Below, piece after piece: positions 217 to 60,635 of a DNA stretch of 64,000 nucleotides. The notes below the pieces were generated by a model. The model had not been told where the DNA came from, did no database searches, and worked only from the letters and a program-made list of their open reading frames with translations. The stretch spans positions 124,001 to 188,000 of IMG/VR virus record IMGVR_UViG_3300036770_007495; one strand, given 5' to 3'. The position numbers and the translations under genes are program-made. Each line of letters begins with the position of its first letter. Position 1 is the first letter of the stretch.

Positions 217-224
217 GCAGTTAT

Positions 225-1280
225 TTATTTTGCAAATTTGATTTTGTATCCACTAGAATCGTAGCATGCAGAGAAAGTTACATCACATGCTCGCAACTCT
301 TTGAACAATCTGATGCAGCTCCATGCATCATACTCTATGCATGCATTGTTGATGATGAATGCTGTACCAAATGGTGCTGTCTTTTTGCCTGGATGCTTAA
401 ACAATACAAACCAGTCATCTTTTTTGCTGCAAATGTATTCAAGAAGTTGAGCTGCTCCTAAAAAATGCATTGCATCTTCTTTGCATTTGATCAAATTCTC
501 GCAGCAAGCAGCACGAGCCATGCAACCAATGCTGTAAGGCAGCATTGAAAAATCATATGGCACTTCATAAATCTTTGATATTTCAGCAAACTGAAATTCA
601 AACTGCATGGCACTAACTACAGGGCGATCTTTTGCAAACTGATTGATGAATTTTTCAATGTTTGCACGATTGCCAATCCATTTGCTTGATTCTCCAATGC
701 GACCGCCATCGCCTTTCAACTCAATGAGGTTGTTGTTGATCATGATGTCGCCTTTGTCAGCTTTGTATCCACCAGCAAGCAACAACAAAGGCAACTCTGC
801 AGGACCAGAATAGCCACGAGTCTTGCCTTCATCAGAAATGGGACGCATTTTTGTCCACACTTCAGCAGTCAATGCACTTGCTTTAAAATCTGCTTTGTAA
901 TATTCACCCAAGAAATCAACAATGTTGGTTCTTTTGAATGCATTTTCTTGCAGATGCTTCAAGAATAATGGAGCAATTGCATCAGTTGATATCGTTTCCA
1001 ACATCTGCAACACACATTCATTGGATACATCACACAAGTAACCAAACAATTTGTTGAGTTCAGTCAATCTATCAATGACTCTGTTGGCAGCAATGAGCTT
1101 GTTGCTTCTTTTGATTAGATTGTCATTGATAACTTTGAAGCATTTGCCAATTTGTGCATGCTGCTTTTGCAGATCAATGTAATGAACAATTATTTCATCC
1201 CACAAACACCCATCAATAACGTATTCCTTTGCATCATCTGTTGCATCATTTGTTGCTACAACGTTGATCATGCAAATCAA
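225..1280 (-). CDS. Hypothetical protein with probable PD-(D/E)XK nuclease-like C-terminal domain
   Basis: 351-aa ORF; segment GPAE...KGDIMINNNLIELKGDGGR resembles an E...GD...ExK restriction-fold active site. Confidence 0.45.
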   Translation of the reverse strand: MICMINVVATNDATDDAKEYVIDGCLWDEIIVHYIDLQKQHAQIGKCFKVINDNLIKRSNKLIAANRVIDRLTELNKLFGYLCDVSNECVLQMLETISTDAIAPLFLKHLQENAFKRTNIVDFLGEYYKADFKASALTAEVWTKMRPISDEGKTRGYSGPAELPLLLLAGGYKADKGDIMINNNLIELKGDGGRIGESSKWIGNRANIEKFINQFAKDRPVVSAMQFEFQFAEISKIYEVPYDFSMLPYSIGCMARAACCENLIKCKEDAMHFLGAAQLLEYICSKKDDWFVLFKHPGKKTAPFGTAFIINNACIEYDAWSCIRLFKELRACDVTFSACYDSSGYKIKFAK

Positions 1281-1687
1281 GGTGCAGTTGACAAATCCTT
1301 GAGTACCGCACTTACTATCTGCTCAACTTGTGCAGGATCTGAGGTGGACAACTGAGAAATTGCAATGTTGATTTGTTTCTCAACATCAGCTGGAATGCTT
1401 GACCTTACTGCTTGAAGTCTGTCACTATCATTGCCTTCAATTGCACCTGCTGTTTGAGCAACAAGTCTAAGCAATTGAATAATGATGGTTCTGAATGTAT
1501 CATAACCGCTCTGAATTTGCTCAGTTGTTTTGTCTGGCTGTTGTGCCATTGCTGCATCAGGTTGAGCAGGAGCTGCTTGTTGATCTTGTGCTGGCGCTTG
1601 CTGCATAGCTACATCAGCAGCTTCATCTTGCTCCATCAAGTAAGTTGCACGAGCTTCTCTAATTACACTGTCAAATATACTTTGCAT
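1277..1687 (-). CDS. Late hypothetical protein, candidate internal head protein
   Basis: TAAATA 6 nt upstream; N-terminus MQSIFDSVIRE..YLME; Q/A/P-rich linker. Confidence 0.6.
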   Translation of the reverse strand: MQSIFDSVIREARATYLMEQDEAADVAMQQAPAQDQQAAPAQPDAAMAQQPDKTTEQIQSGYDTFRTIIIQLLRLVAQTAGAIEGNDSDRLQAVRSSIPADVEKQINIAISQLSTSDPAQVEQIVSAVLKDLSTAP

Positions 1688-1688
1688 T

Positions 1689-2207
1689 TCAGGTATTTAG
1701 GAGCATGCATTTGGTTTTCAAACAGTTGAAGTAGTTGTTGTTGAGAAAAACCAACTTGTATTTGTCAATGAATCTTGTAGCCTTGTCATAGCTATATTTT
1801 ATCTTGTCACCATTGCTGATTTGCATCAAAAATGATGTGCCTTGATTGTTGCTTATGAGTTTGTTGTAATATTCAATAGGTTTGCTGCTGCAATACCATG
1901 TCAAAGGAAGTTTTTTGGTTGCTTCCATGATGAGTTTGTGAATAAACTCCTTGATTTTACCATTTTCATCATCTGGCACCTGGATGCACTCAGAGCTGTA
2001 ATAGAATACTACTTTGCCTTGTGTTATCCCCATTGCAACATCACAACAATGCTTTATTATGCAATGTGTGAGAACCCTCTTAGCATTAGAATCAAACCGT
2101 TTTATATGATACTGTTGCACCAAATCATTGTATTCAATGAGAATGCATTGCAATAGCTCGCAAAAGTTGCAGATGGTTACATTGTAAAGAGGAAAAGAGT
2201 GCAACAT
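1689..2207 (-). CDS. Hypothetical protein
   Basis: 172-aa ORF tightly packed between its neighbours (1-nt gaps). Confidence 0.65.
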   Translation of the reverse strand: MLHSFPLYNVTICNFCELLQCILIEYNDLVQQYHIKRFDSNAKRVLTHCIIKHCCDVAMGITQGKVVFYYSSECIQVPDDENGKIKEFIHKLIMEATKKLPLTWYCSSKPIEYYNKLISNNQGTSFLMQISNGDKIKYSYDKATRFIDKYKLVFLNNNYFNCLKTKCMLLNT

Positions 2208-2208
2208 G

Positions 2209-2622
2209 TTAGCGGTGTTCTTTTAATTTACACAGCCTGCAGTTGATAATCCCGTTGTAATATTCCTTTTTTGTCAGAACCTCTCTTTTGATTTGTTCCT
2301 GAATTTCATAATAACCAAGTTCCCACTTGCTGTTGCAAAACTTTATGATTTCAAATTTAAAATTCTCTTTGCCAGAGTTTTTGATATCATCATTTAATTC
2401 ATTACAACTTCCAGTGTATGATTTCCAATCTGATTCTTTGATTACTGTTTCACGCTTTTTCTTTCCTTTGCGCAACGGCTTCTTTCTTTTAGATAAGCAC
2501 TGTTTTTTACCAATGTACTTTTTATCATTGAGTTTATTGGTTATACAATATACAAAACCATAGAATTCATCAGGTATTGTTATATTACATTCCCAGTGTC
2601 CTAAATTTTCACATTCATTCAT
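2209..2622 (-). CDS. denA: GIY-YIG endonuclease II (DenA-like)
   Basis: YGFVYCITN...KYIGKK, ESDWKSYTGS, FKFEII, YYE..Q...VL...YYNG pattern of T4-like EndoII; ATG 2622 preferred over TTG 2631. Confidence 0.8.
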   Translation of the reverse strand: MNECENLGHWECNITIPDEFYGFVYCITNKLNDKKYIGKKQCLSKRKKPLRKGKKKRETVIKESDWKSYTGSCNELNDDIKNSGKENFKFEIIKFCNSKWELGYYEIQEQIKREVLTKKEYYNGIINCRLCKLKEHR

Positions 2623-2662
2623 CTTATGCAATTAGTTATTCAATTGCAGAATCTAATGCAAC

Positions 2663-4823: not shown

Positions 4824-5306
4824 ATGTCTGTCAACGGAAAAAAACCAACAACAAAATTTAGCAAAGAGCAATTTTATGTAGATCCAGATGTGCTCAAACA
4901 ACAAATTACTGAGTTTTACCAAACAGAAGTTTGTACTACAGCACTTGGTGAAAGCATCAACAAAATTGCTCAGGGGCTAAGTTTCTCACCCAGCTTCATC
5001 AATTACACTTATCGTGATGAAATGATTGGTGATGCCATTGTAAAAATGTATAGTGCACTCAAGCACAAAAAGTACAATGTAAACACAGAAACAAATCCCT
5101 TCTCATACTTTACCACCATTGCATTCCATGCTTTCATCAATCGCATCAAGAAAGAAAAAAAGCATCATGAAGCTGTTGAGCAGTATCGTGCAAATGAATA
5201 CGAGAAGCTTCTGACTGCTGGAGAAATACATGACGAAAAATATCACATCTACACCAAACCCAACTGCGATGATTCAGACGACCAGCAAGATAGCGATCTT
5301 CAGTGA
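4824..5306 (+). CDS. 55: Late-transcription sigma factor gp55
   Basis: FINYTYRDEMIGDA and NPFSYFTTIAFHAFINRIKKEKK motifs; directly upstream of gp47/gp46. Confidence 0.93.
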   Translation: MSVNGKKPTTKFSKEQFYVDPDVLKQQITEFYQTEVCTTALGESINKIAQGLSFSPSFINYTYRDEMIGDAIVKMYSALKHKKYNVNTETNPFSYFTTIAFHAFINRIKKEKKHHEAVEQYRANEYEKLLTAGEIHDEKYHIYTKPNCDDSDDQQDSDLQ

Positions 5307-8132: not shown

Positions 8133-9353
8133 ATGAATCATTCACCCTTTAGGCAACCTTTCAGAGCACCATTTGCGCCACCTGCCAGCATTGCGCCATT
8201 GGCTTCTGTGCCTGTTGCTGCACCAACAGTCAATACCCCTGAAGAAAATTTGCCTCGTGCATTGCAGTATGCTGCTGATACATCTGGGTGCGGTTTTTGG
8301 AGAATGATCTGGCCAGAGCATATTTTGAATGCCAATCAAAAAGCAATGATCACTACTACAACAGTGATGAATGCAAGTGAGAGCTTTTATGCACCTCTCA
8401 AAGCAATTCGCATTCAAAGACAAGCTACAGCACCTCAGCTTGAGTTTGTCAAATATTTGAAAGCTCTTCAGGGCAAATACGGTTTTCGCATCATTTACGA
8501 AATTGATGATGTTGTATTCCATGAAGATATTCCTGATTACAACAAATTTAAGTTTGCATTTGAATCACAGGAAATCAGAAACAACATCATGCAAATCATC
8601 AATTTGTGTGATGAGGTTACTGTGACCAACGAATTCATGCGCGATTATTTCCGCGAGAAAACAAACAAGCGCGAAATCTCTGTCATTCCAAACTTCCCAC
8701 CTGAATGGTGGATTGGTAGATACTATGATCCAAAGCGCAGCTACAATGCACTCTTGAAACACAAAAAGAAGCCACGCATTCTTTATGCTGGATCTGGTGC
8801 ACACTTTGATGTTGAAAACAAAGCTGGTCAGAAAGATGACTTTGAAGACATTGTAAAGCACATCATTGATACTCGGCACAAGTATACTTGGATTTTTATT
8901 GGTGCTGCTCCAATGCAGTTGATTCCATACATTCAGCGCAATGAGATTGAATTTCATCCATGGCAGCGCTTGTATGACTTTCCCAAGAAGATCTTTGAAT
9001 TGGAAGTGCAGATGCTCATTGCACCTTTGCAAGACAACAACTTCAACAGGTGCAAGAGTGACATCAAGTTCATTGAAGCATGCTGCATGGGATTGCCTGT
9101 TGCATGTCAGGACATGGTCACCTACAAAGATGCGCTCATCAAGTTTAAGACTGGTGAAGAAATGATGCACAAGATTGAAGAAACTCTCAAGCGTACCAAC
9201 AGGTATGTTGAAGATTCATATTCATTGCGCAAAATTGGTGAAAAGAGATTCTTGGAGCGTGATGAAAATCATGACTGCTACTTGGAATTGATTACAACAT
9301 CATATGGCAGCCCTGAGCGCAAAAATCTTTTGAGATACAATGATAGCATTTGA
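8133..9353 (+). CDS. GT-B fold glycosyltransferase
   Basis: SGCGFWRM..P, YEIDD, VIPN and IAPLQDNNFNRCKSDIKFIE..GLP donor-binding motif. Confidence 0.85.
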   Translation: MNHSPFRQPFRAPFAPPASIAPLASVPVAAPTVNTPEENLPRALQYAADTSGCGFWRMIWPEHILNANQKAMITTTTVMNASESFYAPLKAIRIQRQATAPQLEFVKYLKALQGKYGFRIIYEIDDVVFHEDIPDYNKFKFAFESQEIRNNIMQIINLCDEVTVTNEFMRDYFREKTNKREISVIPNFPPEWWIGRYYDPKRSYNALLKHKKKPRILYAGSGAHFDVENKAGQKDDFEDIVKHIIDTRHKYTWIFIGAAPMQLIPYIQRNEIEFHPWQRLYDFPKKIFELEVQMLIAPLQDNNFNRCKSDIKFIEACCMGLPVACQDMVTYKDALIKFKTGEEMMHKIEETLKRTNRYVEDSYSLRKIGEKRFLERDENHDCYLELITTSYGSPERKNLLRYNDSI

Positions 9354-9377
9354 TTTCCATTGATATGCACTTATAGT
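9350..9377 (+). promoter_or_regulatory. Sigma70-like promoter of gp43; -35 box contains the upstream TGA stop
   Basis: TTGATT-N16-TATAGT, 8 nt before ATG 9386. Confidence 0.6.
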
Positions 9378-9385
9378 GTATTCAT

Positions 9386-11935
9386 ATGATCGGCTATCGC
9401 AATGCAGTTTATCTGCCTCAAGAAGAATGCGTGAGAGTGTTCACATGGGATGAACATGGCAACAGAACTAAGTTTGATGCACATTACAGTCCGTATGTAA
9501 TGATTGAAGATCCTAACGGCAAAGAAGTTAGCATTTTCAATACCAAGTTGCGCACACGCAAGTTCAAAACTCAATACGATCGCAACAAGTTCATCAAAGA
9601 ATGTGGTACTCGTCGATTGTTTGAAAATCTCAATCCGGTGCAGCAATTCTTGGTTGATGCATATTGGAAGCATAATGCAGAAGCAGACTTTGGTAAATTT
9701 GCTGTGCGTGTCATCACCATTGACATTGAGGTGTATTCACCTTCAGAGTTTCCAACCGCAGAGCATGCTCGTCATCCCATCAACATCATTACGTTTCATG
9801 ACTCTCTTACCAACAGATTCTATTCATGGGGCACTAAAGAATATCATCATAATCGTGATGATTTAACTTATGTGTATTGCAAGACAGAGCGACAGCTGCT
9901 GCTTGACTTTATGGAGTTTTTTGGTACGCTTGAAGTGGATCTTCTCACAGGCTGGAACAGCGCAGGATTCGATATTCCGTACATCATCAATCGCATTGGT
10001 AATGTTCTTGGTGATGAATACTACCAGCAATTGTCTCCTGTGAAGCGTGTTTACAACAGAACACTCAATTCGGGTTTGTTTGGCAAGCAGCAAATTCGCT
10101 GGTACATTGATGGCATCTCTTGCGTAGATTACATTGACATCTACAAGCGCTTTAGTTTTGCCAACAGAGAAAGCTACAAGCTTGACTACATTGCAGAACT
10201 TGAATTGGGCGAGAAGAAGGTGGATTATGGTAATACAAATCTTGCAAGCTTAGCCAATGATGATTGGCAATTGTTTGTAGATTACAACTTGCAAGACGTT
10301 GCGTTGCTTGTGAAGATGGATCAGAAGCTGCAATACATTGAGTTGTTGAGAATGCTTGCATACATGGGTCTTACTACCATGGAAAATGCCATGAGCACCC
10401 TGTCAACCATCTCCGGAACTGCAGCCATCCGAGCCAGACAAAAAGGTCAGTTTTTGCCAACGTTTTTGCGTGGTGAAGATGATGGCAAGAATCCTGGTGC
10501 ATTTGTTGCAGAACCATTGGAAGGATTCCAGACTAGTGTTGTATCATTTGATGCAAACTCTCTGTATCCCAACATCATGATTAGTCTCAACATGTCACCT
10601 GAAACCAAGGTGGGTAAAATCATTGAGAGTGGCGATGAAGGTGTAGTGATTCAACACATCAATGGATCCACTTACAACTTATCACTTGCTAAATTTGCCA
10701 AGTTTGTCAAAGATGAGCAGATTGCCATTTCCAAAGCAAAGGTGTTGTTCAGTCAAAAGAACAAAGGCATCTTGCCTGAAATTGTGGATGAATACTACAA
10801 AGAGCGTGTTGCTGTTCGCAAAGAGATGATGAATCTTAAAAAGAGTGGCAACAAAAGCAAAGATGTACAAGACAAGATCACACAGCTCAATGCCAAGCAA
10901 TTGTGCATCAAGATTTTCATCAATAGCGTATATGGATACATGGGCAACAAAAATGCTCCATTGGGTGATGATGACATTGCTTCATCCATTACTCTGACTG
11001 GTCAGTTTGTAAACAAGTCGTCCAGATCATTGGCACGTGAGTATGTTGCAAGCATTGTAGGCAACAATGACTTTGAAGACATTGCTGTTGCTGGTGATAC
11101 TGACTCTGTCTACTTGTCCATTGCACCTTTGCTGAGACATCACAATGTGCCACTTGCAACTAATGGCAAGGTGACACCCAAGGTGTATGACATCATTGAT
11201 GGTCTCAACAATTACATCAATGAAAAGATCAACGAGAGAATGATCAATGAACTCAATTCAAAAGATCCTCGCATTTTCTTCAAACGAGAATCCATCATTG
11301 ATAAAGCATTGTTCTTGCAGAAAAAGCGGTATGTAGCTCACGTCATTGATGATGAAGGCATTGAGTGTGCCAAGTGGAAGTATGTGGGCGTTGAAGTGGT
11401 ACGAACTGCCATGCCCAAGGCTATCAAGCCCTATGTCAAGAAAATCATTGAGACAATGATTACTTCGCAGAATCGTGCTGATACCAACAAGGTATTGAAT
11501 GAAGCATATGAAGTACTCAAGACTCTCAAGCCAGAAGAAATTGCATATGTCATGGGTGTCAAAGATTATGACAAGTATGCATCTCAATGCAAAGAGTTTA
11601 CAACTGTCAAAGGTATGCCTGTGCATGTTAAATCTGCATATTACTACAACACTCTGCTCAACAAGTTGGAACTGTCGAGCAAATATGAAAAGCTGCAATC
11701 CGGAGACAAATTGAGATGGATGTATCTCAAGACACCCAACAAGTATGGGATGAAGACCATTGCATTCAAGTACTACTATCCAGAAGAATTTCACGCATTG
11801 TTTCAGATTGACTATGAAACAATGTTTGAGAAAATTGTATTCAGTGTTGTGGAGAGATTCTTTGCATGTGTCAAATGGCCTGCGCACAAGCCAAATGAGC
11901 AAATGAGCGCAGATTTATTTGATTTATTTGGTTGA
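9386..11935 (+). CDS. 43: Family B DNA polymerase gp43
   Basis: Exonuclease motifs DIE, GWNS.GFD.PY, YN.QD; polymerase motifs SFDANSLYP, K..INS.YG, GDTDS, KKRY. Confidence 0.97.
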   Translation: MIGYRNAVYLPQEECVRVFTWDEHGNRTKFDAHYSPYVMIEDPNGKEVSIFNTKLRTRKFKTQYDRNKFIKECGTRRLFENLNPVQQFLVDAYWKHNAEADFGKFAVRVITIDIEVYSPSEFPTAEHARHPINIITFHDSLTNRFYSWGTKEYHHNRDDLTYVYCKTERQLLLDFMEFFGTLEVDLLTGWNSAGFDIPYIINRIGNVLGDEYYQQLSPVKRVYNRTLNSGLFGKQQIRWYIDGISCVDYIDIYKRFSFANRESYKLDYIAELELGEKKVDYGNTNLASLANDDWQLFVDYNLQDVALLVKMDQKLQYIELLRMLAYMGLTTMENAMSTLSTISGTAAIRARQKGQFLPTFLRGEDDGKNPGAFVAEPLEGFQTSVVSFDANSLYPNIMISLNMSPETKVGKIIESGDEGVVIQHINGSTYNLSLAKFAKFVKDEQIAISKAKVLFSQKNKGILPEIVDEYYKERVAVRKEMMNLKKSGNKSKDVQDKITQLNAKQLCIKIFINSVYGYMGNKNAPLGDDDIASSITLTGQFVNKSSRSLAREYVASIVGNNDFEDIAVAGDTDSVYLSIAPLLRHHNVPLATNGKVTPKVYDIIDGLNNYINEKINERMINELNSKDPRIFFKRESIIDKALFLQKKRYVAHVIDDEGIECAKWKYVGVEVVRTAMPKAIKPYVKKIIETMITSQNRADTNKVLNEAYEVLKTLKPEEIAYVMGVKDYDKYASQCKEFTTVKGMPVHVKSAYYYNTLLNKLELSSKYEKLQSGDKLRWMYLKTPNKYGMKTIAFKYYYPEEFHALFQIDYETMFEKIVFSVVERFFACVKWPAHKPNEQMSADLFDLFG

Positions 11936-11959
11936 AAAACCAACAACAGAGGGTAAATT
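11932..11959 (+). promoter_or_regulatory. Sigma70-like promoter; -35 box contains the gp43 TGA stop
   Basis: TTGAAA-N16-TAAATT, 5 nt before ATG 11965. Confidence 0.55.
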
Positions 11960-11964
11960 ACTGC

Positions 11965-17651: not shown

Positions 17652-18974
17652 ATGAATTTAGACTTGGATTGGATGGAAAAAGTAGTGACATACAAGTCAC
17701 TGGTGGATGAAGAATATTTGCTAACAATCATTGATCATGTAAAGCCAGAGTATTTCACAGACAAGAATCTGCAGGTTGTGTTTGATGTAGTATGCAATTT
17801 CTACAACAAACGCAAAGCATTGCCTACCAACTCTGAAATCAGAGCATATCTTGATACAGATGAAAAACGAGAGAGCTTCAAGAAAGCACTCAACATCATT
17901 TCAACTGTTGACAAGAATCTCAACAGAGATGAATTGTATGACAATACAGAGCGCTTTTTAAAAGAACGCGGCATTTATCAGACCATGATGTCTGTTGCCA
18001 AAGATGTTGGCAGTGGCAACATTGATACCAGTAAAATTCTGGATCAGTTTGAAAAATCATGCACTGTTACTTTGGTGCATGACATTGGATTGGATCTGCT
18101 CACAAATTTTGATCGAGTAGTTCAAGATCTCAAGCGAGTTGATCCTACAATTTCAACTGGATACAAATGGCTTGATGAAAAGCTTGGTGGGGGTTTCATG
18201 CAAGATGGAAGAGCCATGTATGTGTTTGCTGGTGAGACCAACATTGGCAAAAGCATCATTCTAGGCAATTTTGCAGTCAACATTGCCAAGCAAAAGAAAA
18301 CTGTGCTGGTAATTTCTCTTGAAATGTCAGAGATGGTTTATGCTAAACGTCTAACAGCTCAAATTGCAAAAACACCAACTGGCAAACTTGCCGATGATGT
18401 TGAAGTTGTTGAAGCAAAAATGCACAACTTCAAAGATGCGACTGGCGGCAGAATCATCATCAAAGAGTTTCCGCCAAGCTGCATGTCTCCAAGAGACATT
18501 CAAGGTTACATCACCAAAGTTATCAAGAAAGGTATTCACATTGATGCAATTGTTCTAGACTACATCAACTTGCTTACAACCACACGAGGCAAAGATTCAT
18601 ATGAACGCATCAAATACATCAGTGAAGAAACTCGTGCACTGACATACATCTTCAAATGCCCCATCATCACTGTTACTCAGCTCAACAGAACAGGTTACTC
18701 TGTGAGTGAACCAGGACTGACATCATTGAGTGAGAGTTATGCTCTTGGTGCAACTGCTGACTTCATTGCCAGTGCATGGCAAGGTGAAGGTGACAATGAA
18801 GCAGGCATTTTGAGACAATCCATTCTTAAAAATCGCTTTGGTCGTAATCTCGGAACCAATGCATTCAAGATTGATTATTCAACACTCACCATCTCTGAAG
18901 ATCAAGCGCTCAACAACATGACTCAAGATTCTGAAGATGTAGCCAAGGCACTCAGCATCTTAACACAAGGTTGA
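17652..18974 (+). CDS. 41: gp41 DnaB-family replicative helicase
   Basis: GETNIGKS, SLEMSE, IIKEFP, LDYINL, TQLNR, KNRFG. Confidence 0.95.
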   Translation: MNLDLDWMEKVVTYKSLVDEEYLLTIIDHVKPEYFTDKNLQVVFDVVCNFYNKRKALPTNSEIRAYLDTDEKRESFKKALNIISTVDKNLNRDELYDNTERFLKERGIYQTMMSVAKDVGSGNIDTSKILDQFEKSCTVTLVHDIGLDLLTNFDRVVQDLKRVDPTISTGYKWLDEKLGGGFMQDGRAMYVFAGETNIGKSIILGNFAVNIAKQKKTVLVISLEMSEMVYAKRLTAQIAKTPTGKLADDVEVVEAKMHNFKDATGGRIIIKEFPPSCMSPRDIQGYITKVIKKGIHIDAIVLDYINLLTTTRGKDSYERIKYISEETRALTYIFKCPIITVTQLNRTGYSVSEPGLTSLSESYALGATADFIASAWQGEGDNEAGILRQSILKNRFGRNLGTNAFKIDYSTLTISEDQALNNMTQDSEDVAKALSILTQG

Positions 18975-19002
18975 TTTTTATCAAAATCATGTAAATACCC
19001 AG

Positions 19003-24776: not shown

Positions 24777-24786
24777 ATACATTCAT

Positions 24787-26985: not shown

Positions 26986-26993
26986 ATTACTGC

Positions 26994-27822: not shown

Positions 27823-27852
27823 TCAAAATTGGAAACGCATTTACATTGTGGA

Positions 27853-32072: not shown

Positions 32073-32101
32073 AAAAATCAAAATTTATGCATATGATATC
32101 A

Positions 32102-33121: not shown

Positions 33122-33129
33122 ACTGCTAT

Positions 33130-37440: not shown

Positions 37441-37448
37441 GCTTATAT

Positions 37449-38288: not shown

Positions 38289-38293
38289 ATTGT

Positions 38294-39895
38294 TTAGGGA
38301 ATATAAAATTCTTTGACGTACTTCCACACACCAATGCCGCCATCACATTCACCGCTGTGTGCAGCTCTGAAGCTTGTAGAGATAGTAGCGGATTTGATGC
38401 GAATAAAACCAGTTGCAACTGCAGGCTGCAATCCATACTTTGTCAAATAATCAGTGATGTATGAAGTTGTAGTTCCTGTGCCAGATCTATTCTTGTAACA
38501 GAAAGCAATGTTGCGCTTGTCAATGTTGGGTGCATTGTTTGCGTCTGTTGTCTTGATGTCTACAGCAGAAGAAGTTGTTACATTTGTGACACTTGCATAG
38601 AAATTCTTGTAATACAATTGATTGTCAAGATAAATGATGAGAGTTGTTACTCTATCAATAACTTTTGGTCTGCTGCTTGTGCCTGTTGATCTTGTGAAAG
38701 AAGAATTGTAAACATTGTCGCTGATGTCTGTTACAGAATTGTTGACAGTGAATGTGTAAAAACCGTCTCTGCACTTGTCATATGCGCGTGTAACAATTTC
38801 TACAGCAATGAGTTTATTCTGCGCCATGTATTCAGGTGTTATTGTGTAAGTTTGAACACCAGTATTAATTGAGCAGCTGCCTTTCTCACCCTTTTCAGCA
38901 AGATAGTAGTAATCTTTGTATCTGAAATTTGTGTAGAACATTTGAGGTTCATCAATTGCATAAAAGAGCGTATTGCCAATTGTGAGAACATTCATGTTGG
39001 TGCTGTCACCATTTTGACTGTACACACTAACTGATGATACTCCTTGTGAAAGTACAATTGCCCATCCATTGTCACCTGTTGCAGGAGTTGCAGGATTTGC
39101 TGCAGGGTTCACATGAGATCCTTTGGATACCTGAGTCATGTACATGTTGTTGTTGTACTGCTCATTGAACCAAACGGTGTATCTTCCTGCACCGCTGCGA
39201 GATACACTTGCAACATTGTATGCAGAACGAATAGTGGTGCTAACGCCCAGTGTGCCGGGTGCTGCAGTAACATTTTGTGGCAGCGGAAATGTAAAGTTGT
39301 TTGTATCAGTTCTTGTAACTGGGTATGAACCATTAAGTGTTGCATCAGAAGCAGTGAGGCTAATGATTTGTCCTGTAGCAAGACCATGATTAGCTTTGGT
39401 GCACTGTACAATGCCACCGCTTGAACCTGTATCAACTGTATATGAAATTCCTGTGATGGGCTTGCCATCAAAATTTACCCAGCATTGACGAATGGGGCTA
39501 AGAAAAATTTGCTCAACAAGTCCTTTGCTGTTGACGTTGATGGTATCAATTTGAGAATATGATCCTTCAGGATTTGGATCCAAGTCAGGCAATGCTTCCA
39601 AAACAACTTGACCAAAATCTACATGTCCATTGCCATCTGTCACAAGTGGAAACCCTTCACCAGAAACAGAATCAGTGTTAGTGTATTCCAACTCACCAGC
39701 AGAAAGTTTGCCAGAAATTGTGACGCTGCCACTCACCTGAATGCCATTGCCAGATACACCCAAAGCAAGTGCAGAAGCTTGACCACTACCATCATACATG
39801 GTTTGCAATCCCTGTGTAGGAAGTGCTGCACCTTCAGCATGCAATACACCCTCGTAGGTAGATTCAACTGTTTGATCGAGTAAACTGGTAGGCAT
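38294..39895 (-). CDS. Tail fibre-like structural protein
   Basis: INVNSKG.V, WVNFDG, HGL.TG, IRSAYNVASV.R.G.G.Y.V.F; TAAATA 7 nt upstream. Confidence 0.75.
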   Translation of the reverse strand: MPTSLLDQTVESTYEGVLHAEGAALPTQGLQTMYDGSGQASALALGVSGNGIQVSGSVTISGKLSAGELEYTNTDSVSGEGFPLVTDGNGHVDFGQVVLEALPDLDPNPEGSYSQIDTINVNSKGLVEQIFLSPIRQCWVNFDGKPITGISYTVDTGSSGGIVQCTKANHGLATGQIISLTASDATLNGSYPVTRTDTNNFTFPLPQNVTAAPGTLGVSTTIRSAYNVASVSRSGAGRYTVWFNEQYNNNMYMTQVSKGSHVNPAANPATPATGDNGWAIVLSQGVSSVSVYSQNGDSTNMNVLTIGNTLFYAIDEPQMFYTNFRYKDYYYLAEKGEKGSCSINTGVQTYTITPEYMAQNKLIAVEIVTRAYDKCRDGFYTFTVNNSVTDISDNVYNSSFTRSTGTSSRPKVIDRVTTLIIYLDNQLYYKNFYASVTNVTTSSAVDIKTTDANNAPNIDKRNIAFCYKNRSGTGTTTSYITDYLTKYGLQPAVATGFIRIKSATISTSFRAAHSGECDGGIGVWKYVKEFYIP

Positions 39896-41802: not shown

Positions 41803-41810
41803 ATGAATAT

Positions 41811-44800
41811 TTACTCATAGTCAACAAATTCAACACCCAAGATGTTGATTGTTGCTGGCAGAGATTGTGAAACTTGGCTCAAGACTTGTTGTTTGAGTGA
41901 TGTCTTGAGTGATTCATTTGCAATGCCAGAGTTTTTGATGATGATGGATACATTGTTGCTCTTCATGCCTGGTGCTCCAAATGCAAACATGCGCTTGATG
42001 ACATCAATGTTGTTGCGCATGCCACAAGGCAAATGGAATGTTAAGTCAGATACATTGTAATCCTGCATTGTGATGAATCTTACATCATTTTCTGAAAGAG
42101 CTTTAGCATAAATTTTCGGATACAGCAGTGTTGCATTGCTTGCAAAGTATGCTTGCGGCTGTTTCAAGAATTGAGCAAGTGTTGCACCATTGACAAATTG
42201 TGTAGTTCCAAATGCAATTGCATTTGAAATCAATGGCTGCTGCACAGCATATTTTGCTGCACCAAAATTAACTACATCTGCTGTCTTGCCATCAATGAAT
42301 ATGGTTGCATTGCCCTGAATGCCATCAAGTCTCAAAGCAAAATGCTTGGTTCCTGGCAAGATGTTGTCAAGATCCACAGTTGTTGTGACTGTTTTGATGT
42401 CTCTATTGTTGTATTTGTTAGCAAGCTTCACCACAAAATCAAGCTTGTTGCCGCGATTCTTGTATTTTTGCTGCAAATATTGTGAATTTGTGAGATTGAG
42501 CGTTGCATTTTCAGAGTAAAGCACATCAGTTGCAACAGATGCAATGATGTTGCCTTGTGTATCCAGCTTTGCAAGATGTATTTTGTTGTTTGCATCTTTG
42601 GATGCAACAATGGTTGTATGAACCAATGCACTGCCAATGTATTCATAGCAGTTGGTGATTGCAAAATTGATGGTGCTCAATGCATTGAGTGTACTGACAT
42701 TGTATTGCAACACACGCTCACTATTGTATTTTACAACCTTGAAGTCGCCATTGAGGATGTAAATGTTTTGATCCTTATCAACATCAAAATCTCTGATGTA
42801 GTTGATAACTTGAGCAGAGGAAAGTGACTTGAATGCTACATATTGCTCATTGGTTGCATAGTTGTAATTGACAATTTGATTGTTGTTATACAGATACAAG
42901 GCAGCATTGGTGCCATAAGGTATTGCTTTTGTGCCTAGAGTACCTACAATGCCACGATCACCATACAAAATACTCTTGGATGCAGGTGCTACTTCAAATG
43001 TTGACAGAGTCTCTGTAGCAAAATTGAAGCGAGATACAGTCGTCTCATCAGCATGAAGAATATACACATCATCATTGTTTTGAACAACATCAATCCAGTT
43101 GAAAGTTGATGGAGCATTTGACAAAAGGCCAATGTCGTTGAGTGTTCGTACAATTAAATCAGCATAAAAGCTTGGTGTACTTGCTGCCAACACATTGTAA
43201 GAATAGCTGATGTTGTTAAAATCAGACAATCCATTGGCGCCTGCATATGCACCATATCCATTTTGCACAGCTTCTAAAAATTGTCTAAAGCCTGTGTAAA
43301 GATTTGGACCAGTATTGACTTGAAATACAACTGCACTATAAGCATATGGTGAAGTTGTTAGCAAATCACGCGCAGTAACAATATCATTGTTGTAAGTTGC
43401 AGTAGAAGCATTGATGTTGAATGTTGTGGAATCAGCACCATAAGGAGATGATTCATCTTGAAACACCAAATTAACAACTCTGGTTATTGTTGATGTTGTT
43501 CTTGGTGCAGAGACAACAATCATTGTGCGTTCTGTAGCACCATATTCACTAAAGAGCCTCACATTGACACGTTCATCATACAATGCTTCATCATTATTGA
43601 AGTAAGGAAGCAGTGTTTGCTTGAGAATTGTATCACGCATTTGAATCAAAGGCTCAAGAGTTGAGTTCATGGACCCTGAATCATCAAACCAAATGTTGAG
43701 CTCTGTGTTTACATCAATGAGACCTGCATCAGCAAGATTGTATTTGTCATACAGAGTGCCATCAGCATGCATTTTGTACAATGCATAGTTGGAGATGGCA
43801 CCAAAGTCATCAATGGCATCAAAGCGTGGCACAAAAAGAGTTGGTTCAGGCAACAAAGTCTGTGTGATGCGATTGAAATCACTGTTGTAAATGTTGAGAG
43901 CAGATGTGCTCTGCAACATGATGAGTGGTGTTACAACAGGATCTTTGATGAGAGCAAATCCAGTATCAGTCAAATTGCCAAGAACTTGATAAGCATTGAG
44001 ATTTTTCCAATCATCACACTTGAGCCAGAAGGAAATGGTGAATGCATAATTTGCATTAATTGCATCATAGTTCTGAACTACATCATATGAATTGCCATTG
44101 AGTTCATATGCTTTGTTTGCAATGTAGGCATCTGAATACAGTTGATTGTTGCTTGTCTTCCACTGCAAACTATCAATGATGAGTGCATTGTCATGAGTTG
44201 CAAGATGTTCATTGATGCGTTTGTTGCCAATTCTGTAGTAGAAGTATTCTTGATTGGGTTCAAAAACTACATCACTCTTCTTATCAAAGAAATCATATGC
44301 AAATGATTGCTGTTGCAAGTATGCAGATACAAAATCCTCATATGTTCCATATGTTACATTAACAGCTTTAGCTGCATCCAATGGTGACATCTTGTTGGAA
44401 TTGTAGTATCTATCCACCCATTCAGCAGATGAATTATTTGGACCAGCAGATAGCCAGGTGCAAAGATATTGACCATCTTCACCTTGTGCAGCATTCTTGA
44501 GAGCAAGGATTTGATCAGCTGTGTAAGGTGAATCACCAGCATAAGCACCATCTGTTCTCAATGAAGCATCATTTACATTGAGTTGCTCATACGGATACAG
44601 AGATGCAGATGTTTTGAATGATGAATATGCATCAGACTTAGCAACAAAGTCATTGGAAAACATTGTGAAGTTGATGGTGATGTTTTCATCACCCTTTTCT
44701 TGACTGTTGCCTGCAAAAATGTTGGTGTAATCTCTGTTGATGGGACCAGCATTGTTGTTTCTTTGGTTGGTGTAACTTGCTTTGTCAAGAGTACCAAGTT

Positions 44801-50855: not shown

Positions 50856-50863
50856 AATGCTAT

Positions 50864-51328
50864 TTAATACTCGCCAATTGTTATTTTTGACATGGTTTTG
50901 TACAGCTGCAGCACATATTTGAACTGTTTTTCATGCTTGCGGCACATTTTTTCTGCAGGTGAGCTAAAGTATTTGGACTCTGGCACAATTTGCTTTTCAT
51001 GCCACTTCATCACATTGAATTGATGCCAATGCATCATCTCATGCATGATGCTGATGAACAATTGTTTTTGTAGTTTTTTTGCATCAGTGCATTCAATTAT
51101 TCTGTTGCACAAAAAAACTTCATCCTCAAATGCATAATATCCATAATTTACATCATCTCTCTTGTCTACTCTCAATGCAATGTAATGATGCTTTACTGGT
51201 GTTGAATCACAGTCAAAATGAACATTGTAGAATGCTGTATATGCAGCACCAAAAGTGACGCAATCAAAATTACACTCATCAAGAATTTTCTTGGCTATGC
51301 CTGATGGATAAAAATGAAATACTTTCAT
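50864..51328 (-). CDS. Zincin-like metallopeptidase (HExxH)
   Basis: SIMHEMMHWHQ...Y..SP.E; likely start MKVFHF at 51328. Confidence 0.7.
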   Translation of the reverse strand: MKVFHFYPSGIAKKILDECNFDCVTFGAAYTAFYNVHFDCDSTPVKHHYIALRVDKRDDVNYGYYAFEDEVFLCNRIIECTDAKKLQKQLFISIMHEMMHWHQFNVMKWHEKQIVPESKYFSSPAEKMCRKHEKQFKYVLQLYKTMSKITIGEY

Positions 51329-51784: not shown

Positions 51785-52575
51785 GTTACTACTCCGGAGC
51801 ATATCAAGCACCAACATGCGGCGTGTTTTACACTGGCGCTAACAATGGAAACTTTGATTGTCAAGTCAATGTCAACAACTTGAACAACAATGCTTCTGAA
51901 CGTGAAACCATCTCCAATTCCATTCAAGAAGCCATCAATCGATTTGGATCCACTGTAGCATACTATGTGAATACATACAATGTATCTGCTGCAAACAACA
52001 TTTATGGTGAAGATCCAACCAGCACATTCTTTGGTCCAACCAATGTGGTGATGTACATCAAATTGTCTGAAAATTCAGTTACATTGCGCAGATTTGGCTT
52101 TGATAGTGGTGATGACATTACAGCATATGTGCACATCAGTTCATATTATGCAACATTTGCACCATTGAGTGTGTATCCTGCATTGCAGCAAGCCATTGAA
52201 CCCAAAGCAGGTGATGTATTCCAGATGATTCAGTATGGTGCAACCAGACCAGGTGATCGCAATGGCAAATTCTTCGAAATCACTGAAAGAGTTGATCAAG
52301 AAATGGATGATCCAAGCATGAATCCATTGGGTGGACACTACATGTGGAAATTGCGTGCTCGCCGTCTTGACTTTAGCTTTGAGCCTGGATTGTCTGGTGA
52401 AAGAGGTGCTGCACAGGTGTTTGACAATGCTCTCAATGGCATCATGCCTGGCGGTACACAACAACCTTCACCTGACAAGACATATCCCGGCAGCGCAGAT
52501 GCAGAAAGCCTCAACATTTTTGATCAAAGTGTAAACAACACAAGTGTTTATGGAGAATATGGTTACAACCCTTGA
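51781..52575 (+). CDS. 14: gp14-like neck protein
   Basis: E.I..FG..V.Y...IYGED....F...MY...FG...D...PK.GD....FFEIT. Confidence 0.8.
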   Translation: MSYYSGAYQAPTCGVFYTGANNGNFDCQVNVNNLNNNASERETISNSIQEAINRFGSTVAYYVNTYNVSAANNIYGEDPTSTFFGPTNVVMYIKLSENSVTLRRFGFDSGDDITAYVHISSYYATFAPLSVYPALQQAIEPKAGDVFQMIQYGATRPGDRNGKFFEITERVDQEMDDPSMNPLGGHYMWKLRARRLDFSFEPGLSGERGAAQVFDNALNGIMPGGTQQPSPDKTYPGSADAESLNIFDQSVNNTSVYGEYGYNP

Positions 52576-52599
52576 TTTTTCATTGCATGGTGTTATTAT
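52572..52599 (+). promoter_or_regulatory. Sigma70-like promoter; -35 box contains the gp14 TGA stop
   Basis: TTGATT-N13-TGT-TATTAT (extended -10), 7 nt before ATG 52607. Confidence 0.65.
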
Positions 52600-52606
52600 T
52601 TGATAG

Positions 52607-53777: not shown

Positions 53778-53800
53778 GTTTTCAATGTTCTCTTTTACTC

Positions 53801-54607: not shown

Positions 54608-54612
54608 AGCAT

Positions 54613-54633
54613 TATTTAGGGCTGCAATAAATA
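54613..54633. promoter_or_regulatory. Back-to-back divergent late promoters
   Basis: TATTTA 54613-54618 (-) and TAAATA 54628-54633 (+). Confidence 0.75.
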
Positions 54634-54641
54634 AAAGCACT

Positions 54642-56935: not shown

Positions 56936-56954
56936 ATTTGTGCCTGGATTTTCA

Positions 56955-56960
56955 TAAATA
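56955..56960 (+). promoter_or_regulatory. T4-type late promoter TAAATA (representative of 24 copies listed in findings)
   Basis: cATAAATA-tctac-ATG of gp18; gp55 is encoded in the window. Confidence 0.85.
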
Positions 56961-56965
56961 TCTAC

Positions 56966-59608: not shown

Positions 59609-59625
59609 GACACAAAAACAAAGAG

Positions 59626-59654
59626 GAGTGCAGCGCAAGCTGCACTCTTTTTTT
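59626..59654 (+). terminator. Intrinsic terminator after gp18
   Basis: GAGTGCAGC-GCAA-GCTGCACTC-TTTTTTT. Confidence 0.92.
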
Positions 59655-59675
59655 GTTTAAACCATAAATACTAAC

Positions 59676-60170
59676 ATGAACGAAGACCTAAAAGAGCTGC
59701 AAAACATCTATGAAAGTGCTGTCAATGAAGGCATTTTGAATAGAATTGGTGCCAACATTGCAGGTGCAGTTGGGACTGCAGGTGGTGCACTCAAGGGAGC
59801 ATATTATGGTGCAACAGGCAATGTGCAAGGTGCAGCTGATGCAGCATTAAAAGCAAAAAATGCTAAATTTGATTCATACAAAAAAGCTGCTGATGCAAAG
59901 TTAGAAAAAGTTTTTAACGAAGTGGTGACCGATCTTACAAAGCTCAATTTGGTAGATCAAGCAAGAATGAAGCCATACATTGATGGATTCAAACAAAACC
60001 TTGCAACTTCTTTTACTCAATTTTTGCAGGGATTGACTGCTACAGTTGCACAAGCTCCAGCAGCCCCCACTCAAACCACACAGCAAACTACTCAAACCAT
60101 CCCACCATCTCCACCAGCAAGTACTACTGCTACGCCTCCTGCTGCATCACAGCCGGTTGGTCCTATGTAA
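59676..60170 (+). CDS. Late protein with Gly/Ala-rich segment, candidate internal head protein
   Basis: TAAATA 5 nt upstream; MNEDLKELQNIYESAVNE followed by GILNRIGANIAGAVGTAGG; P/T-rich tail. Confidence 0.75.
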   Translation: MNEDLKELQNIYESAVNEGILNRIGANIAGAVGTAGGALKGAYYGATGNVQGAADAALKAKNAKFDSYKKAADAKLEKVFNEVVTDLTKLNLVDQARMKPYIDGFKQNLATSFTQFLQGLTATVAQAPAAPTQTTQQTTQTIPPSPPASTTATPPAASQPVGPM

Positions 60171-60186
60171 TGCATTTGCATAATTT

Positions 60187-60627
60187 ATGGCTCACAAAGA
60201 GTTTAAACAAGGCGTTTACAAGCCCATCAACAGGCAGAAATACATTGGTGATAAACTGCCTTTTTATAGATCAGGTTATGAGCTAAAATTCATGCGATGG
60301 GCTGATGCTAACCCCAATGTTTTGAAGTGGGGAAGTGAAAGCATCATTGTCCCTTACAAGAGCCCCATTGATGGTAAAATGCATCGCTATTTTGTAGATA
60401 ATGTGGTCATCATCAAAGAAGGAGAAAACATCAAAAAATATCTCATTGAGATCAAACCACACAAACAAACACAGCCGCCAACTGCTCATGGCAACAAAAA
60501 ACAGACCACCATTTTGTATGAGCAAGCTACATATGTCATCAATCAAGCCAAATGGGAAGCAGCAAAGAAGTGGTGCAAAGATCATGAATGGGAGTTTCTC
60601 ATCTTAACAGAGAAGCATTTGCCATAA
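60187..60627 (+). CDS. 4: gp4 head completion nuclease (TnsA-like)
   Basis: G.YKP.N..KY.GD, YRS.YE..FM.W.D.NP.V..W.SE, HRYF.D, EIKP..QT, NQAKW.AA, ILTE. Confidence 0.92.
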   Translation: MAHKEFKQGVYKPINRQKYIGDKLPFYRSGYELKFMRWADANPNVLKWGSESIIVPYKSPIDGKMHRYFVDNVVIIKEGENIKKYLIEIKPHKQTQPPTAHGNKKQTTILYEQATYVINQAKWEAAKKWCKDHEWEFLILTEKHLP

Positions 60628-60635
60628 ATACTATG

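What the first reader, a model, noticed from the sequence alone, without database searches (positions are those of the whole stretch)
222..60630. Stop codons double as promoter elements, and stop identity predicts the next gene's promoter class
Seen: the TAA of the late box TAAATA is the upstream gene's stop at 225, 24774, 33130, 37449, 41811, 50864 and 60625 (variants TAAATT 26983, TAAACA 38294). The TGA inside the -35 TTGA is the upstream stop at 9351, 11933, 18972, 27820 and 52573, and the TAG in TAGAAA at 32070. Inference: stop-codon choice is under regulatory selection, with TAA-ATA announcing a late neighbour and T-TGA a sigma70-type neighbour. This compression rule could also help annotate relatives.
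Basis: partly seen in the sequence, partly recalled or inferred. Interest (0 to 1): 0.7.

Follow-up and report, generated by a model that had tools for sequence, protein, structure and literature searches.

The report
Stop codons embedded in start-adjacent promoters
In this freshwater T4-like giant phage the promoters sit directly against the start codons, apparently giving leaderless mRNAs, so tightly packed upstream genes often end on the TAA or TGA inside the next gene's promoter; this is a by-product of packing, not a code in which the stop codon announces the promoter class.

Summary
13 of the 15 listed sites are stops of long ORFs lying inside a promoter-like element that sits at a fixed short distance from the next start codon. 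TAAACA at 38294 and TAGAAA at 32070 fail.

The window belongs to a 224.7-kb T4-like phage that encodes a gp55-type late sigma factor (window 4824-5306). It has no Shine-Dalgarno sequences.
- 63 of 312 genes carry TAAATA 5-8 nt before the start, against 0.1% of control ATGs.
- 57 of 312 carry TTGAnn-N15-18-TAnnnT 4-8 nt before the start, against 1.4% of control ATGs.

With this spacing the predicted +1 is the A of ATG, which implies leaderless mRNAs. This is inferred, not shown.

The proposed rule fails. Stop codon against downstream class gives chi-square p=0.40 genome-wide. The weak TAA-late link (OR 1.96) falls to OR 1.01 once the 14 physically shared stops are removed. TGA does not predict a sigma70-type neighbour (OR 0.78); a third of TGA stops are ATGA overlaps.

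Sharing occurs at 20-30% of every junction type. It is conserved or switches with junction geometry in relatives. T4 itself shows it at 6 of 32 TATAAATA boxes.

The more interesting result is the promoter-against-ATG, SD-free architecture in a T4-like clade. More distant relatives keep the same box but follow it with a longer leader, SD-containing in the most distant.

The parts
4824..5306 (+). gp55-family late sigma factor gene, next to gp47/gp46 homologues
   Evidence: T4 gp55 against the genome gives E=5e-9. PHROG 234 'late sigma transcription factor' gives E=1e-25.
222..227 (-). Late box TAAATA. Its TAA (227-225) is the stop of ORF 225-1271. N5 follows, then a GTG start at 216.
24774..24779 (+). 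Late box TAAATA. Its TAA is the stop of the exonuclease-like gene 23898-24776. N7 follows, then ATG 24787.
26983..26988 (+). Variant box TAAATT. Its TAA is the stop of 26581-26985. N5 follows, then ATG 26994. TTGCCA lies 15 nt upstream.
33127..33132 (-). Late box. Its TAA is the stop of the 576-aa ORF 33130-34860. N5 follows, then ATG 33121.
37446..37451 (-). Late box. Its TAA is the stop of ORF 37449-38288. N5 follows, then ATG 37440 (858-aa tail protein).
41808..41813 (-). Late box. Its TAA is the stop of the 1309-aa ORF. N5 follows, then GTG 41802 (627-aa ORF).
50861..50866 (-). Late box. Its TAA is the stop of ORF 50864-51328. N5 follows, then ATG 50855.
   Evidence: In relative L002 the same junction ends on the box-end TAG instead.
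60625..60630 (+). Late box. Its TAA is the stop of the TnsA-like-N gene 60187-60627. N5 follows, then ATG 60636 (lysozyme/baseplate-hub-like).
   Evidence: TAA-in-box is conserved in focal plus L002, L003, L004, L005 and L008.
9350..9385 (+). Sigma70-type promoter TTGATT-16-TATAGT-N8 before the DNA polymerase ATG at 9386. The TGA of TTGA (9351-9353) is the stop of glycosyltransferase gene 8133-9353.
11932..11964 (+). TTGAAA-16-TAAATT-N5 before ATG 11965. The TGA is the stop of the DNA polymerase gene.
18971..19002 (+). TTGATT-15-TAAATA-N5 before ATG 19003 (DHH phosphoesterase). The TGA is the stop of the DnaB-like helicase gene.
27819..27852 (+). TTGATC-17-TACATT-N5 before ATG 27853. The TGA is the stop of 27424-27822.
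52572..52606 (+). TTGATT-16-TATTAT-N7 before ATG 52607 (exonuclease). The TGA is the stop of 51781-52575.
   Evidence: The TTGA stop is conserved in L002, L003, L004 and L008 while the -10 varies.
38286..38296 (-). TAAACAATATG. The stop lies 8 nt before the ATG and there is no box at N5-8. This is not a late box and is probably a coupled junction.
32070..32075 (+). TAGAAA. This is the stop of 31086-32072. The next gene is convergent (32102-33121, minus strand), so it is not a promoter element for a neighbour.
56955..56960 (+). Late box N5 before the tail sheath ATG at 56966. It is not shared; the upstream stop lies 33 nt before the ATG.
59626..59670 (+). An intrinsic terminator after the sheath gene, followed directly by late box 59665-59670 and ATG 59676.
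   Evidence: The stem ends 26 nt before the ATG.
61534..61539 (+). Late box N5 before the tail tube ATG at 61545.
   Evidence: An RNA contig spans 61556-62087, and RNA depth is 1.7 upstream against about 10 within the gene.
54613..54633 (.). Back-to-back divergent late boxes. The minus-strand box is 54618-54613, leading to ATG 54607. The plus-strand box is 54628-54633, followed by N8 and ATG 54642 (large terminase).
   Evidence: RNA depth drops from 33 to 0.9 across 54600.

Best explanation
The phage is a distant T4 relative whose genes have no Shine-Dalgarno leader. Its promoters abut the start codon.
- Early and replication genes use host-type promoters: TTGAnn, a 15-18 nt spacer, TAnnnT, then 4-8 nt (mostly 5-6), then ATG.
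- Structural genes use the single T4-type late box read by the phage's gp55 sigma: TAAATA, then 5-8 nt (mostly 5-7), then ATG.

With normal -10-to-start spacing, transcription should begin on or within 1-3 nt of the A of ATG, giving leaderless mRNAs. Genes without their own promoter mostly start by overlap or near-contact with the preceding stop (ATGA, TAATG).

A leaderless gene's promoter must occupy the 11-35 nt immediately upstream of its ATG, and the genome is about 92% coding. The upstream gene therefore has to end inside or just before that promoter. The only stop triplets the elements contain are TAA (and TA+A/G at the box end) in TAAATA, and TGA in TTGA. An upstream frame that reaches them ends there.

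Shared stops are therefore a packing by-product of promoter-against-ATG architecture. The stop codon carries no information beyond the motif it lies in.

Shown: motifs, positions, statistics, gp55 homology, conservation in relatives. Inferred: promoter activity, timing and the exact 5' ends.
For: Motif position and enrichment:
- Bases upstream of starts are G-depleted, and TAAATA sits at -11..-6.
- SD-like 4-mers are at background level: 0/56 late, 18/199 other, background 8.3%.
- Exact TAAATA at N5-8 occurs at 63/312 starts against 0.1% of control ATGs. Sigma70-type elements occur at 57/312 against 1.4%.
- The late class conserves only the hexamer and nothing at -35. The sigma70 class conserves gTTGA and TAnAnT.

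Gene content:
- A gp55 homologue is present.
- Late-box genes include sheath, tube, tail fibres and a baseplate-lysozyme-like gene. Sigma70-type genes include DNA polymerase, primase, exonuclease and a QueC-like gene.

Transcription-unit boundaries:
- Terminators end 22-66 nt before eight starts, leaving room only for the promoter.

Comparative series at the sheath gene:
- The close clade has TAAATA-N5-ATG.
- The clade at about 44% identity has N6-N9.
- Others have N28.
- The most distant have AGGAG-N9-ATG with the box far upstream.

T4 itself has a box-to-ATG distance of 13-34 nt with an SD.

Sharing frequency is similar for every signal type: 14/46 late, 10/48 sigma70, and 42/176 ATGA or TAATG.

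No residual association remains after shared stops are removed, in three analyses: the caller-independent count, and relative genome G001.

Orthologous junctions switch between ATGA (TGA) and TAA-in-box. T4 shares stops at 6/32 boxes.

About 69% of genes are either promoter-adjacent or coupled.

RNA contigs do not extend upstream of three box-bearing starts.
Against: - No transcript 5' ends were mapped. The RNA evidence is Logan contigs from 90-95% relatives, which resolve ends only to 11-55 nt.
- One RNA contig of a relative reads through a box, which could be read-through transcription or DNA carry-over.
- The full T4 octamer TATAAATA is rare here, with 4 in the genome.
- gp45 was not found by sequence and gp33 was not sought.
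- An unanchored sigma70 scan of 20 kb shows no excess (45 found, 47.8 expected).
- 69 genes (22%) have neither an adjacent motif nor a coupled junction. Some of these have A/C-rich leaders, so not everything is leaderless.
- With my gene calls the upstream frame is in register with the box TAA somewhat more often than one third (18/35, p=0.02). A mild preference for sharing cannot be excluded.
- The host is unknown.
Confidence: 0.7

Rival explanations
1. Stop-codon identity is itself selected as a regulatory signal: TAA-ATA announces a late neighbour and T-TGA a sigma70-type neighbour. Stop choice would then predict promoter class and could guide annotation.
For: - Within the window, TAA is enriched before late-box genes (OR 6.5, p=0.006).
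- In relative G001 the full table gives p=0.02.
- A gene end reading TAAATA is followed by a start at N5-8 in 14-15 of 19 cases.
- Shared junctions are conserved across genomes with 70-80% protein identity.
- With my gene calls the upstream frame is in register in 18/35 cases (p=0.02).
Against: - The genome-wide table gives p=0.40 and p=0.28.
- All the TAA excess disappears once shared stops are removed: OR 1.01 in the focal genome, and 16/9/5 against 59/45/10 in G001.
- TGA is not enriched before sigma70-type genes (OR 0.78), and the predictive value of T-TGA is 10/41.
- 37 of 117 TGA stops are ATGA overlaps.
- The caller-independent frame test gives 15/36, p=0.19.
- The predictive value of TAAATA is simply detection of the promoter motif itself.
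Confidence: 0.08
2. TAAATA, and the TAnnnT hexamers, are not promoters. They would be SD-independent translation-initiation or re-initiation signals on polycistronic mRNAs, for example A/U-rich ribosome or S1 landing sites. Embedded stops would then serve termination-reinitiation coupling.
For: - The motif sits at a fixed short distance from the start codon and there is no SD anywhere.
- An RNA contig in a relative crosses a box.
- 30% of the boxes contain the upstream stop.
- Some other genes have A/C-rich SD-less leaders.
Against: - The hexamer is the core of the T4 late promoter, and a gp55 homologue is encoded.
- The TAnnnT hexamers come with a conserved gTTGA 15-18 nt upstream, which has no role in translation.
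- Boxes follow intrinsic terminators. They also follow tRNA 3' ends and stand before first genes of divergent pairs, where no upstream ribosome arrives.
- In relatives the same box lies 9, 28 or more than 80 nt from the orthologous ATG, so the spacing to the ATG is not what is conserved.
- 70% of the boxes contain no stop.
Confidence: 0.12
3. Chance. In an AT-rich, tightly packed genome, TAA followed by ATA and TGA preceded by T arise often enough near gene ends with no functional element involved.
For: - The total TAAATA count in the window is only modestly above the dinucleotide shuffles (40 against 27.3).
- Unanchored sigma70-like hits are at the shuffle level.
Against: - There is a 200-fold positional enrichment at starts.
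- In relative G001, 42 TAAATA-N5-ATG occur against 4 for the reversed pattern.
- 14 shared stops are observed against 0.5 expected.
- The elements are conserved at orthologous junctions.
Confidence: 0.02

Closest known systems
Bacteriophage T4 late promoters (TATAAATA, gp55/gp33/gp45-dependent)
   Same: - A single A/T-rich box with no -35 element (PMC2988020).
- A gp55 homologue is encoded.
- The box precedes structural genes.
- In T4 itself the inner TAA of the box is the stop of an upstream ORF of at least 60 codons at 5 of 32 boxes, and the box-end TAG is such a stop at one more. Stop sharing is therefore not peculiar to this phage.
   Different: - Only the 6-bp core TAAATA is conserved here, with A at -1 in 54% of cases. 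TATAAATA occurs 4 times in the genome.
- The box lies 5-8 nt (mostly 5-7) from the start codon, against 13-34 nt in T4, and no SD lies in between.
- gp45 was not identified and gp33 was not tested.
Leaderless transcription programmes of Thermus phages phiYS40 and Lalka27a, and '-10 adjacent to ORF' expression in Deinococcus-Thermus
   Same: - The -10 element lies a few bp upstream of the ORF.
- Most transcripts begin at the A or G of the initiator codon.
- This holds for several temporal classes (10.64898/2026.04.20.719267; PMC3594737; PMC12340547).
   Different: - The phage lineage is unrelated.
- Here the late class uses a T4-type gp55 box.
- This phage comes from mesophilic freshwater, soil and subsurface samples, and its host is unknown.
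- Leaderless 5' ends are inferred here, not mapped.
Overlapping stop/start junctions (ATGA, TAATG) of compact phage and bacterial operons
   Same: A stop triplet is embedded in the next gene's initiation signal. These make up 42 of the 176 junctions without a promoter motif, about the same share as the promoter-embedded stops.
   Different: In those junctions the shared signal is the start codon, serving translational coupling. In the junctions studied here it is a transcriptional element.
Late promoters of more distant T4-like phages (IMG/VR loci L027-L032; Kyanoviridae-like phage C48C1)
   Same: The TAAATA-containing box is kept, along with the gene order gp55-gp47-gp46 ... gp43.
   Different: These phages keep SD-containing leaders, for example TAAATAagaggaaatataaATG and AGGAG-N9-ATG.

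Membership tests
T4-type late promoter / gp55-dependent late transcription | Phage encodes a gp55-family late sigma factor | tested here: met
   Window 4824-5306. T4 gp55 gives E=5e-9 with 39% identity over 78 aa. PHROG 234 gives E=1e-25.
T4-type late promoter / gp55-dependent late transcription | 8-bp TATAAATA box | tested here: not met
   There are only 4 TATAAATA in 224.7 kb. The conserved element is the 6-bp core TAAATA, with A at -1 in 54% of cases and no preference at -2.
T4-type late promoter / gp55-dependent late transcription | No -35 element | tested here: met
   Information content is about 0 from -30 to -3 relative to the box in 56 late-class sites.
T4-type late promoter / gp55-dependent late transcription | Precedes late (virion) genes | tested here: met
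   The box precedes sheath, tube, tail fibre/collar, baseplate-lysozyme-like and terminase genes. A few non-structural genes also carry it (DHH phosphoesterase, DUF5856).
T4-type late promoter / gp55-dependent late transcription | Box about one helical turn upstream of the mapped transcription start | not testable with these tools
   Only assembled RNA contigs of relatives are available. The geometry would place +1 on the A of ATG.
T4-type late promoter / gp55-dependent late transcription | Sliding clamp gp45 and co-activator gp33 present | tested here: inconclusive
   Neither T4 gp45 nor C48C1 gp45 finds a match. Pfam and PHROGs are silent on three candidate ORFs. The clamp loader gp44 is present. 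gp33 was not sought.
Sigma70-type (host) promoter | TTGACA-like and TATAAT-like hexamers 16-18 bp apart | tested here: met
   57 genes qualify. The consensus is gTTGA(t/c)t and TA(t/c)A(t/a)T, with spacers mostly 16-17.
Sigma70-type (host) promoter | More frequent than chance | tested here: met
   Anchored on start codons, the frequency is 18% against 1.4% at control ATGs. An unanchored scan of 44001-64000 shows no excess (45 against 47.8), so the evidence lies in the position.
Leaderless mRNA | -10 element 5-8 nt upstream of the start codon, so that +1 falls on the start codon | tested here: met
   Late box spacers: N5 38, N6 16, N7 7, N8 2. Sigma70 -10-to-ATG distances are mostly 5-6 nt.
Leaderless mRNA | No Shine-Dalgarno sequence | tested here: met
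   G is depleted at -12..-4. SD-like 4-mers occur at 0/56 late and 3/50 sigma70 genes, against a background of 8.3%.
Leaderless mRNA | Transcript 5' end coincides with the A or G of the start codon | not testable with these tools
   There are no raw RNA reads. Contig ends lie 11, 25 and 55 nt inside three box-bearing ORFs and none extends upstream. This is consistent but not decisive.
Leaderless mRNA | AUG (or GUG) initiator | tested here: met
   Late class: 54 ATG and 2 GTG. Sigma70 class: 49 ATG and 1 GTG. No TTG in either.

The most novel reading that the evidence does not exclude
A whole clade of freshwater T4-like jumbo phages has given up Shine-Dalgarno leaders. It would express both its host-sigma (early) genes and its gp55 (late) genes as leaderless mRNAs, with the late TAAATA box moved to 5 nt from the AUG, and the remaining genes would depend on stop-start coupling. 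This would be the first T4-family example of a near-complete leaderless programme, and a natural series (N5, N9, N28, SD-led) showing how the leader was lost.
Probability: 0.55. Interest if true: 0.6.

Novelty: new variant of a known kind. Interest (0 to 1): 0.45.

Why it matters
- **Annotation.** In this phage clade, start codons are best called from the adjacent promoter motif or from stop-start contact, not from an SD. Standard callers will misplace starts. My own first pass mis-started the terminase gene.
- **The proposed stop-codon rule.** The rule adds nothing beyond finding the motif, so it should not be used.
- **Biology.** A T4-type late system fused to leaderless initiation would show that the gp55 box can work with its +1 on the AUG. 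It would also extend mostly leaderless phage programmes beyond Thermus phages. The graded series of relatives offers material for studying how SD leaders are lost.
- **Genome evolution.** Wherever a fixed signal contains a stop triplet (ATGA, TAAATA, TTGA), about 20-30% of upstream genes end on it. This holds in T4 as well.

Tried and rejected
- **Megablast of 12 kb against GenBank phages** found no match.
- **A 627-aa tail protein as query for relatives** returned nothing. The sheath protein worked.
- **RNA evidence.** Two read-laying runs on three metatranscriptomes and two runs of unknown kind gave only assembled contigs of 90-95% relatives. There were no read-level 5' ends, so no transcription starts could be mapped. 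A second run search found no better RNA runs.
- **Host clues.** No WhiB and no psbA were found. The host stays unknown.
- **gp45.** It was not found with the T4 or C48C1 protein, nor with Pfam or PHROGs on candidate ORFs.
- **Motif learner.** My first motif learner stuck at one spacer and gave a weak matrix. I replaced it with explicit patterns.
- **Terminator search.** A strict search found only 31 sites, 8 of them next to starts. This is supportive but a small sample.
- **Composition estimate.** A mononucleotide estimate suggested strong genome-wide avoidance of TAAATA. Dinucleotide shuffles show no such avoidance (40 against 27 in the window), so I dropped that argument.
- **Literature.** I found no paper describing stop codons inside T4-type late boxes, or a leaderless T4-like phage. 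Absence from this library is not proof of novelty.

Full report
**What the window is**

The 64-kb window is bases 124,001-188,000 of a 224,703-bp IMG/VR virus with direct terminal repeats and about 41% GC. It has no near relative among GenBank phages.

Its proteins are those of a distant T4-like phage:
- gp43-type DNA polymerase, about 30% identical to cyanophage, pelagiphage and methylophage polymerases
- gp46 and gp47
- UvsW-like helicase and UvsX
- gp41-like helicase, gp32 and primase
- large terminase, tail sheath, tail tube and tail fibres

The clamp loader gp44 lies outside the window. Close and graded relatives are common in freshwater, soil and subsurface metagenomes.

**Checking the observation**

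- Seven TAA stops are the first half of an exact TAAATA. A start codon follows 5 nt later, or 7 nt at 24774.
- The TAAATT at 26983 has the same geometry.
- Five TGA stops are the last three bases of a TTGAnn hexamer. A TAnnnT-like hexamer follows 15-17 nt later, and an ATG 5-8 nt after that.

Two items fail. TAAACA at 38294 is only 2 nt from the ATG. TAGAAA at 32070 is followed by a convergent gene.

**What the elements are**

I called genes on the whole genome with a codon-usage caller: 312 genes, 92% coding. Three things stand out.

1. There is no Shine-Dalgarno signal. G is depleted upstream of starts, and SD-like 4-mers are at background frequency.
2. 63 genes have an exact TAAATA 5-8 nt before the start (N5 38, N6 16, N7 7, N8 2), against 13 of 12,684 other ATGs. 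Nothing else is conserved around it, in particular nothing at -35.
3. 57 genes have gTTGA(t/c)t, a 15-18 nt spacer, TA(t/c)A(t/a)T, then 4-8 nt (mostly 5-6) and ATG, against 1.4% of control ATGs.

The first class precedes sheath, tube, fibres, a baseplate-lysozyme-like gene and terminase. The second precedes DNA polymerase, primase, exonuclease and queuosine-type genes, plus the many small genes of the 8-50 kb region.

The phage encodes a gp55-family late sigma factor at window 4824-5306. T4 late promoters are a single TATA-type box about one helical turn upstream of the start site, with no -35 element (PMC2988020).

**The spacing**

A -10-type hexamer 5-6 nt from the ATG puts the expected +1 on the A of ATG. 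Both promoter classes therefore predict leaderless mRNAs.

Supporting points:
- ATG or GTG is the start in all motif-bearing genes.
- Intrinsic terminators end 22-66 nt before eight starts, leaving room only for the promoter. An example is the terminator at 59626-59647, followed by the box at 59665 and the ATG at 59676.
- Boxes also directly follow tRNA 3' ends and stand back-to-back between divergent genes.
- 102 further genes begin within 10 nt of, or overlapping, the preceding stop. This is the expected alternative for internal genes without an SD.

The comparative series is telling. Upstream of the orthologous sheath gene:
- the close clade has TAAATA-N5-ATG;
- the clade at about 44% identity has N6-N9;
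- a third group has N28 without an SD;
- the most distant T4-likes have AGGAG-N9-ATG with the box far upstream.

T4 itself has 13-34 nt with an SD between box and ATG. The nearest named genome by polymerase, C48C1, uses SDs. The box is therefore the conserved promoter, and its distance to the ATG has shrunk in this clade.

RNA evidence is thin. Metatranscriptome contigs of 90-95% relatives stop 11, 25 and 55 nt inside three box-bearing ORFs, with low depth upstream. One contig, however, reads through a box. The 5' ends remain unmapped.

**Testing the interpretation**

Among 265 tandem junctions, the table of stop codon (TAA/TGA/TAG) by downstream class is:

| Class | TAA | TGA | TAG |
|---|---|---|---|
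| late | 26 | 13 | 2 |
| sigma70 | 23 | 18 | 2 |
| none | 82 | 84 | 10 |

This gives chi-square p=0.40, or p=0.28 with motif-aware start calls.

- TAA before late genes has OR 1.96 (p=0.07), and OR 1.01 after removing the 14 stops that physically lie in the box.
- TGA before sigma70-type genes has OR 0.78. All but a few such TGAs are the shared ones.
- 37 of 117 TGA stops are ATGA overlaps.
- A caller-independent, motif-first count gives 11 shared among 41 tandem junctions. The non-shared stops there are TGA 14, TAA 12 and TAG 2, which is the background composition.
- In the 203.8-kb relative G001, 22 of 58 late junctions share the TAA. The full table gives p=0.02. Again the excess vanishes once shared stops are removed: 16/9/5 against 59/45/10.

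As an annotation rule, a gene end reading TAAATA is followed by a start at N5-8 in 14-15 of 19 cases. That is just motif detection. T-TGA works in only 10 of 41 cases.

**Why stops are shared**

Sharing is far above what independent positioning gives: 14 observed against about 0.5 expected. But it is equally common for every signal that contains a stop triplet:
- 30% of late junctions;
- 21% of sigma70 junctions;
- 24% of promoter-less junctions (ATGA or TAATG).

The upstream frame is in register with the box TAA in 18/35 cases (p=0.02) with my calls, and in 15/36 (p=0.19) in the caller-independent set. When it is in register, the box TAA is nearly always the stop. ORFs in the other frames end a few nucleotides before the box. 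This is what tight packing against a fixed element produces.

In orthologous junctions the stop changes with the geometry. Terminase-to-next-gene is ATGA in the focal genome and L002, but ttaTAAatagcaacATG in five other relatives. Other junctions move among ATGA, TAATG, TAAnATG and longer spacers. The 60625 and 52573 junctions are conserved across five or six genomes.

T4 shows the same embedding at 6 of 32 TATAAATA boxes.

**Comparison with known systems and novelty**

Stop codons inside late boxes are not a new mechanism. They occur in T4 and follow from compaction.

A mostly leaderless phage programme is known for Thermus phages phiYS40 and Lalka27a (10.64898/2026.04.20.719267; PMC3594737). 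'-10 adjacent to the ORF' is known for Deinococcus-Thermus (PMC12340547).

What appears new is the combination:
- a T4-family phage with a gp55-type box;
- only the 6-bp core of that box conserved;
- the box 5 nt from the AUG, with no SD;
- a graded series of relatives.

I found no description of this in the searchable literature. I rate it a new variant of a known kind, with moderate interest.

**Limits**

- The gene calls are my own and imperfect. The terminase start was first miscalled and one minus-strand gene at 53801-54607 was missed.
- The promoter classes are pattern-defined.
- 22% of genes fit neither class nor coupling.
- gp45 and gp33 are unidentified.
- The host is unknown.
- No 5' ends are mapped.

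Noticed in passing
window 59676-60170 (with 59626-59670 upstream and 60187-60627 downstream): A 164-aa ORF with no family sits between the sheath terminator and a TnsA-like-N endonuclease gene (PF08722). It has no tblastn match in relatives L002-L008. An RNA contig of a relative joins 59654 directly to 60187 through TGTATAAATACCTTTGC. It looks like a strain-specific insertion that brought its own late box.
   Followed up: partly
genome 59057, 64878, 71669 (outside the window, tRNA region 58-70 kb): Three phage tRNA genes end in an encoded ...CCA that directly abuts TAAATA-N5-ATG. A late box and a start codon therefore follow the tRNA 3' end with no spacer.
   Followed up: no
window 54613-54633; 26552-26574; 24742-24759: Late boxes on opposite strands stand back-to-back, 6-11 nt apart. 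At the first two sites they lie between divergent genes. At the first site these are the large terminase and an unknown 268-aa gene.
   Followed up: partly
genome 17156, 19746, 41119, 70442 (outside the window): Some genes with no adjacent promoter motif have A/C-rich, SD-free leaders, for example aaagaaagaaacaaacaaaATG. This suggests a second, SD-independent mode of initiation.
   Followed up: no
window 13777-14511 and 15585-16286: A QueC-like gene and a glutamine amidotransferase-like gene, both with sigma70-type promoters, hint at 7-deazaguanine modification of the phage DNA.
   Followed up: no
window 53748-53777: A perfect 13-bp-stem bidirectional terminator lies between the convergent genes ending at 53723 (+) and 53801 (-).
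   Followed up: no
L034 (phage C48C1) 19845, 23245: In this otherwise SD-using Kyanoviridae-like phage, the DNA polymerase and primase genes have TTGACA/TTGACG-N17-TATAAT-N6-7-ATG. This is leaderless geometry at a few early genes.
   Followed up: no
window 54432-54642: The longest-ORF or TTG start for the large terminase (54432) is probably wrong. The PHROG match begins at residue 73, and a late box (54628-54633) precedes the ATG at 54642.
   Followed up: partly
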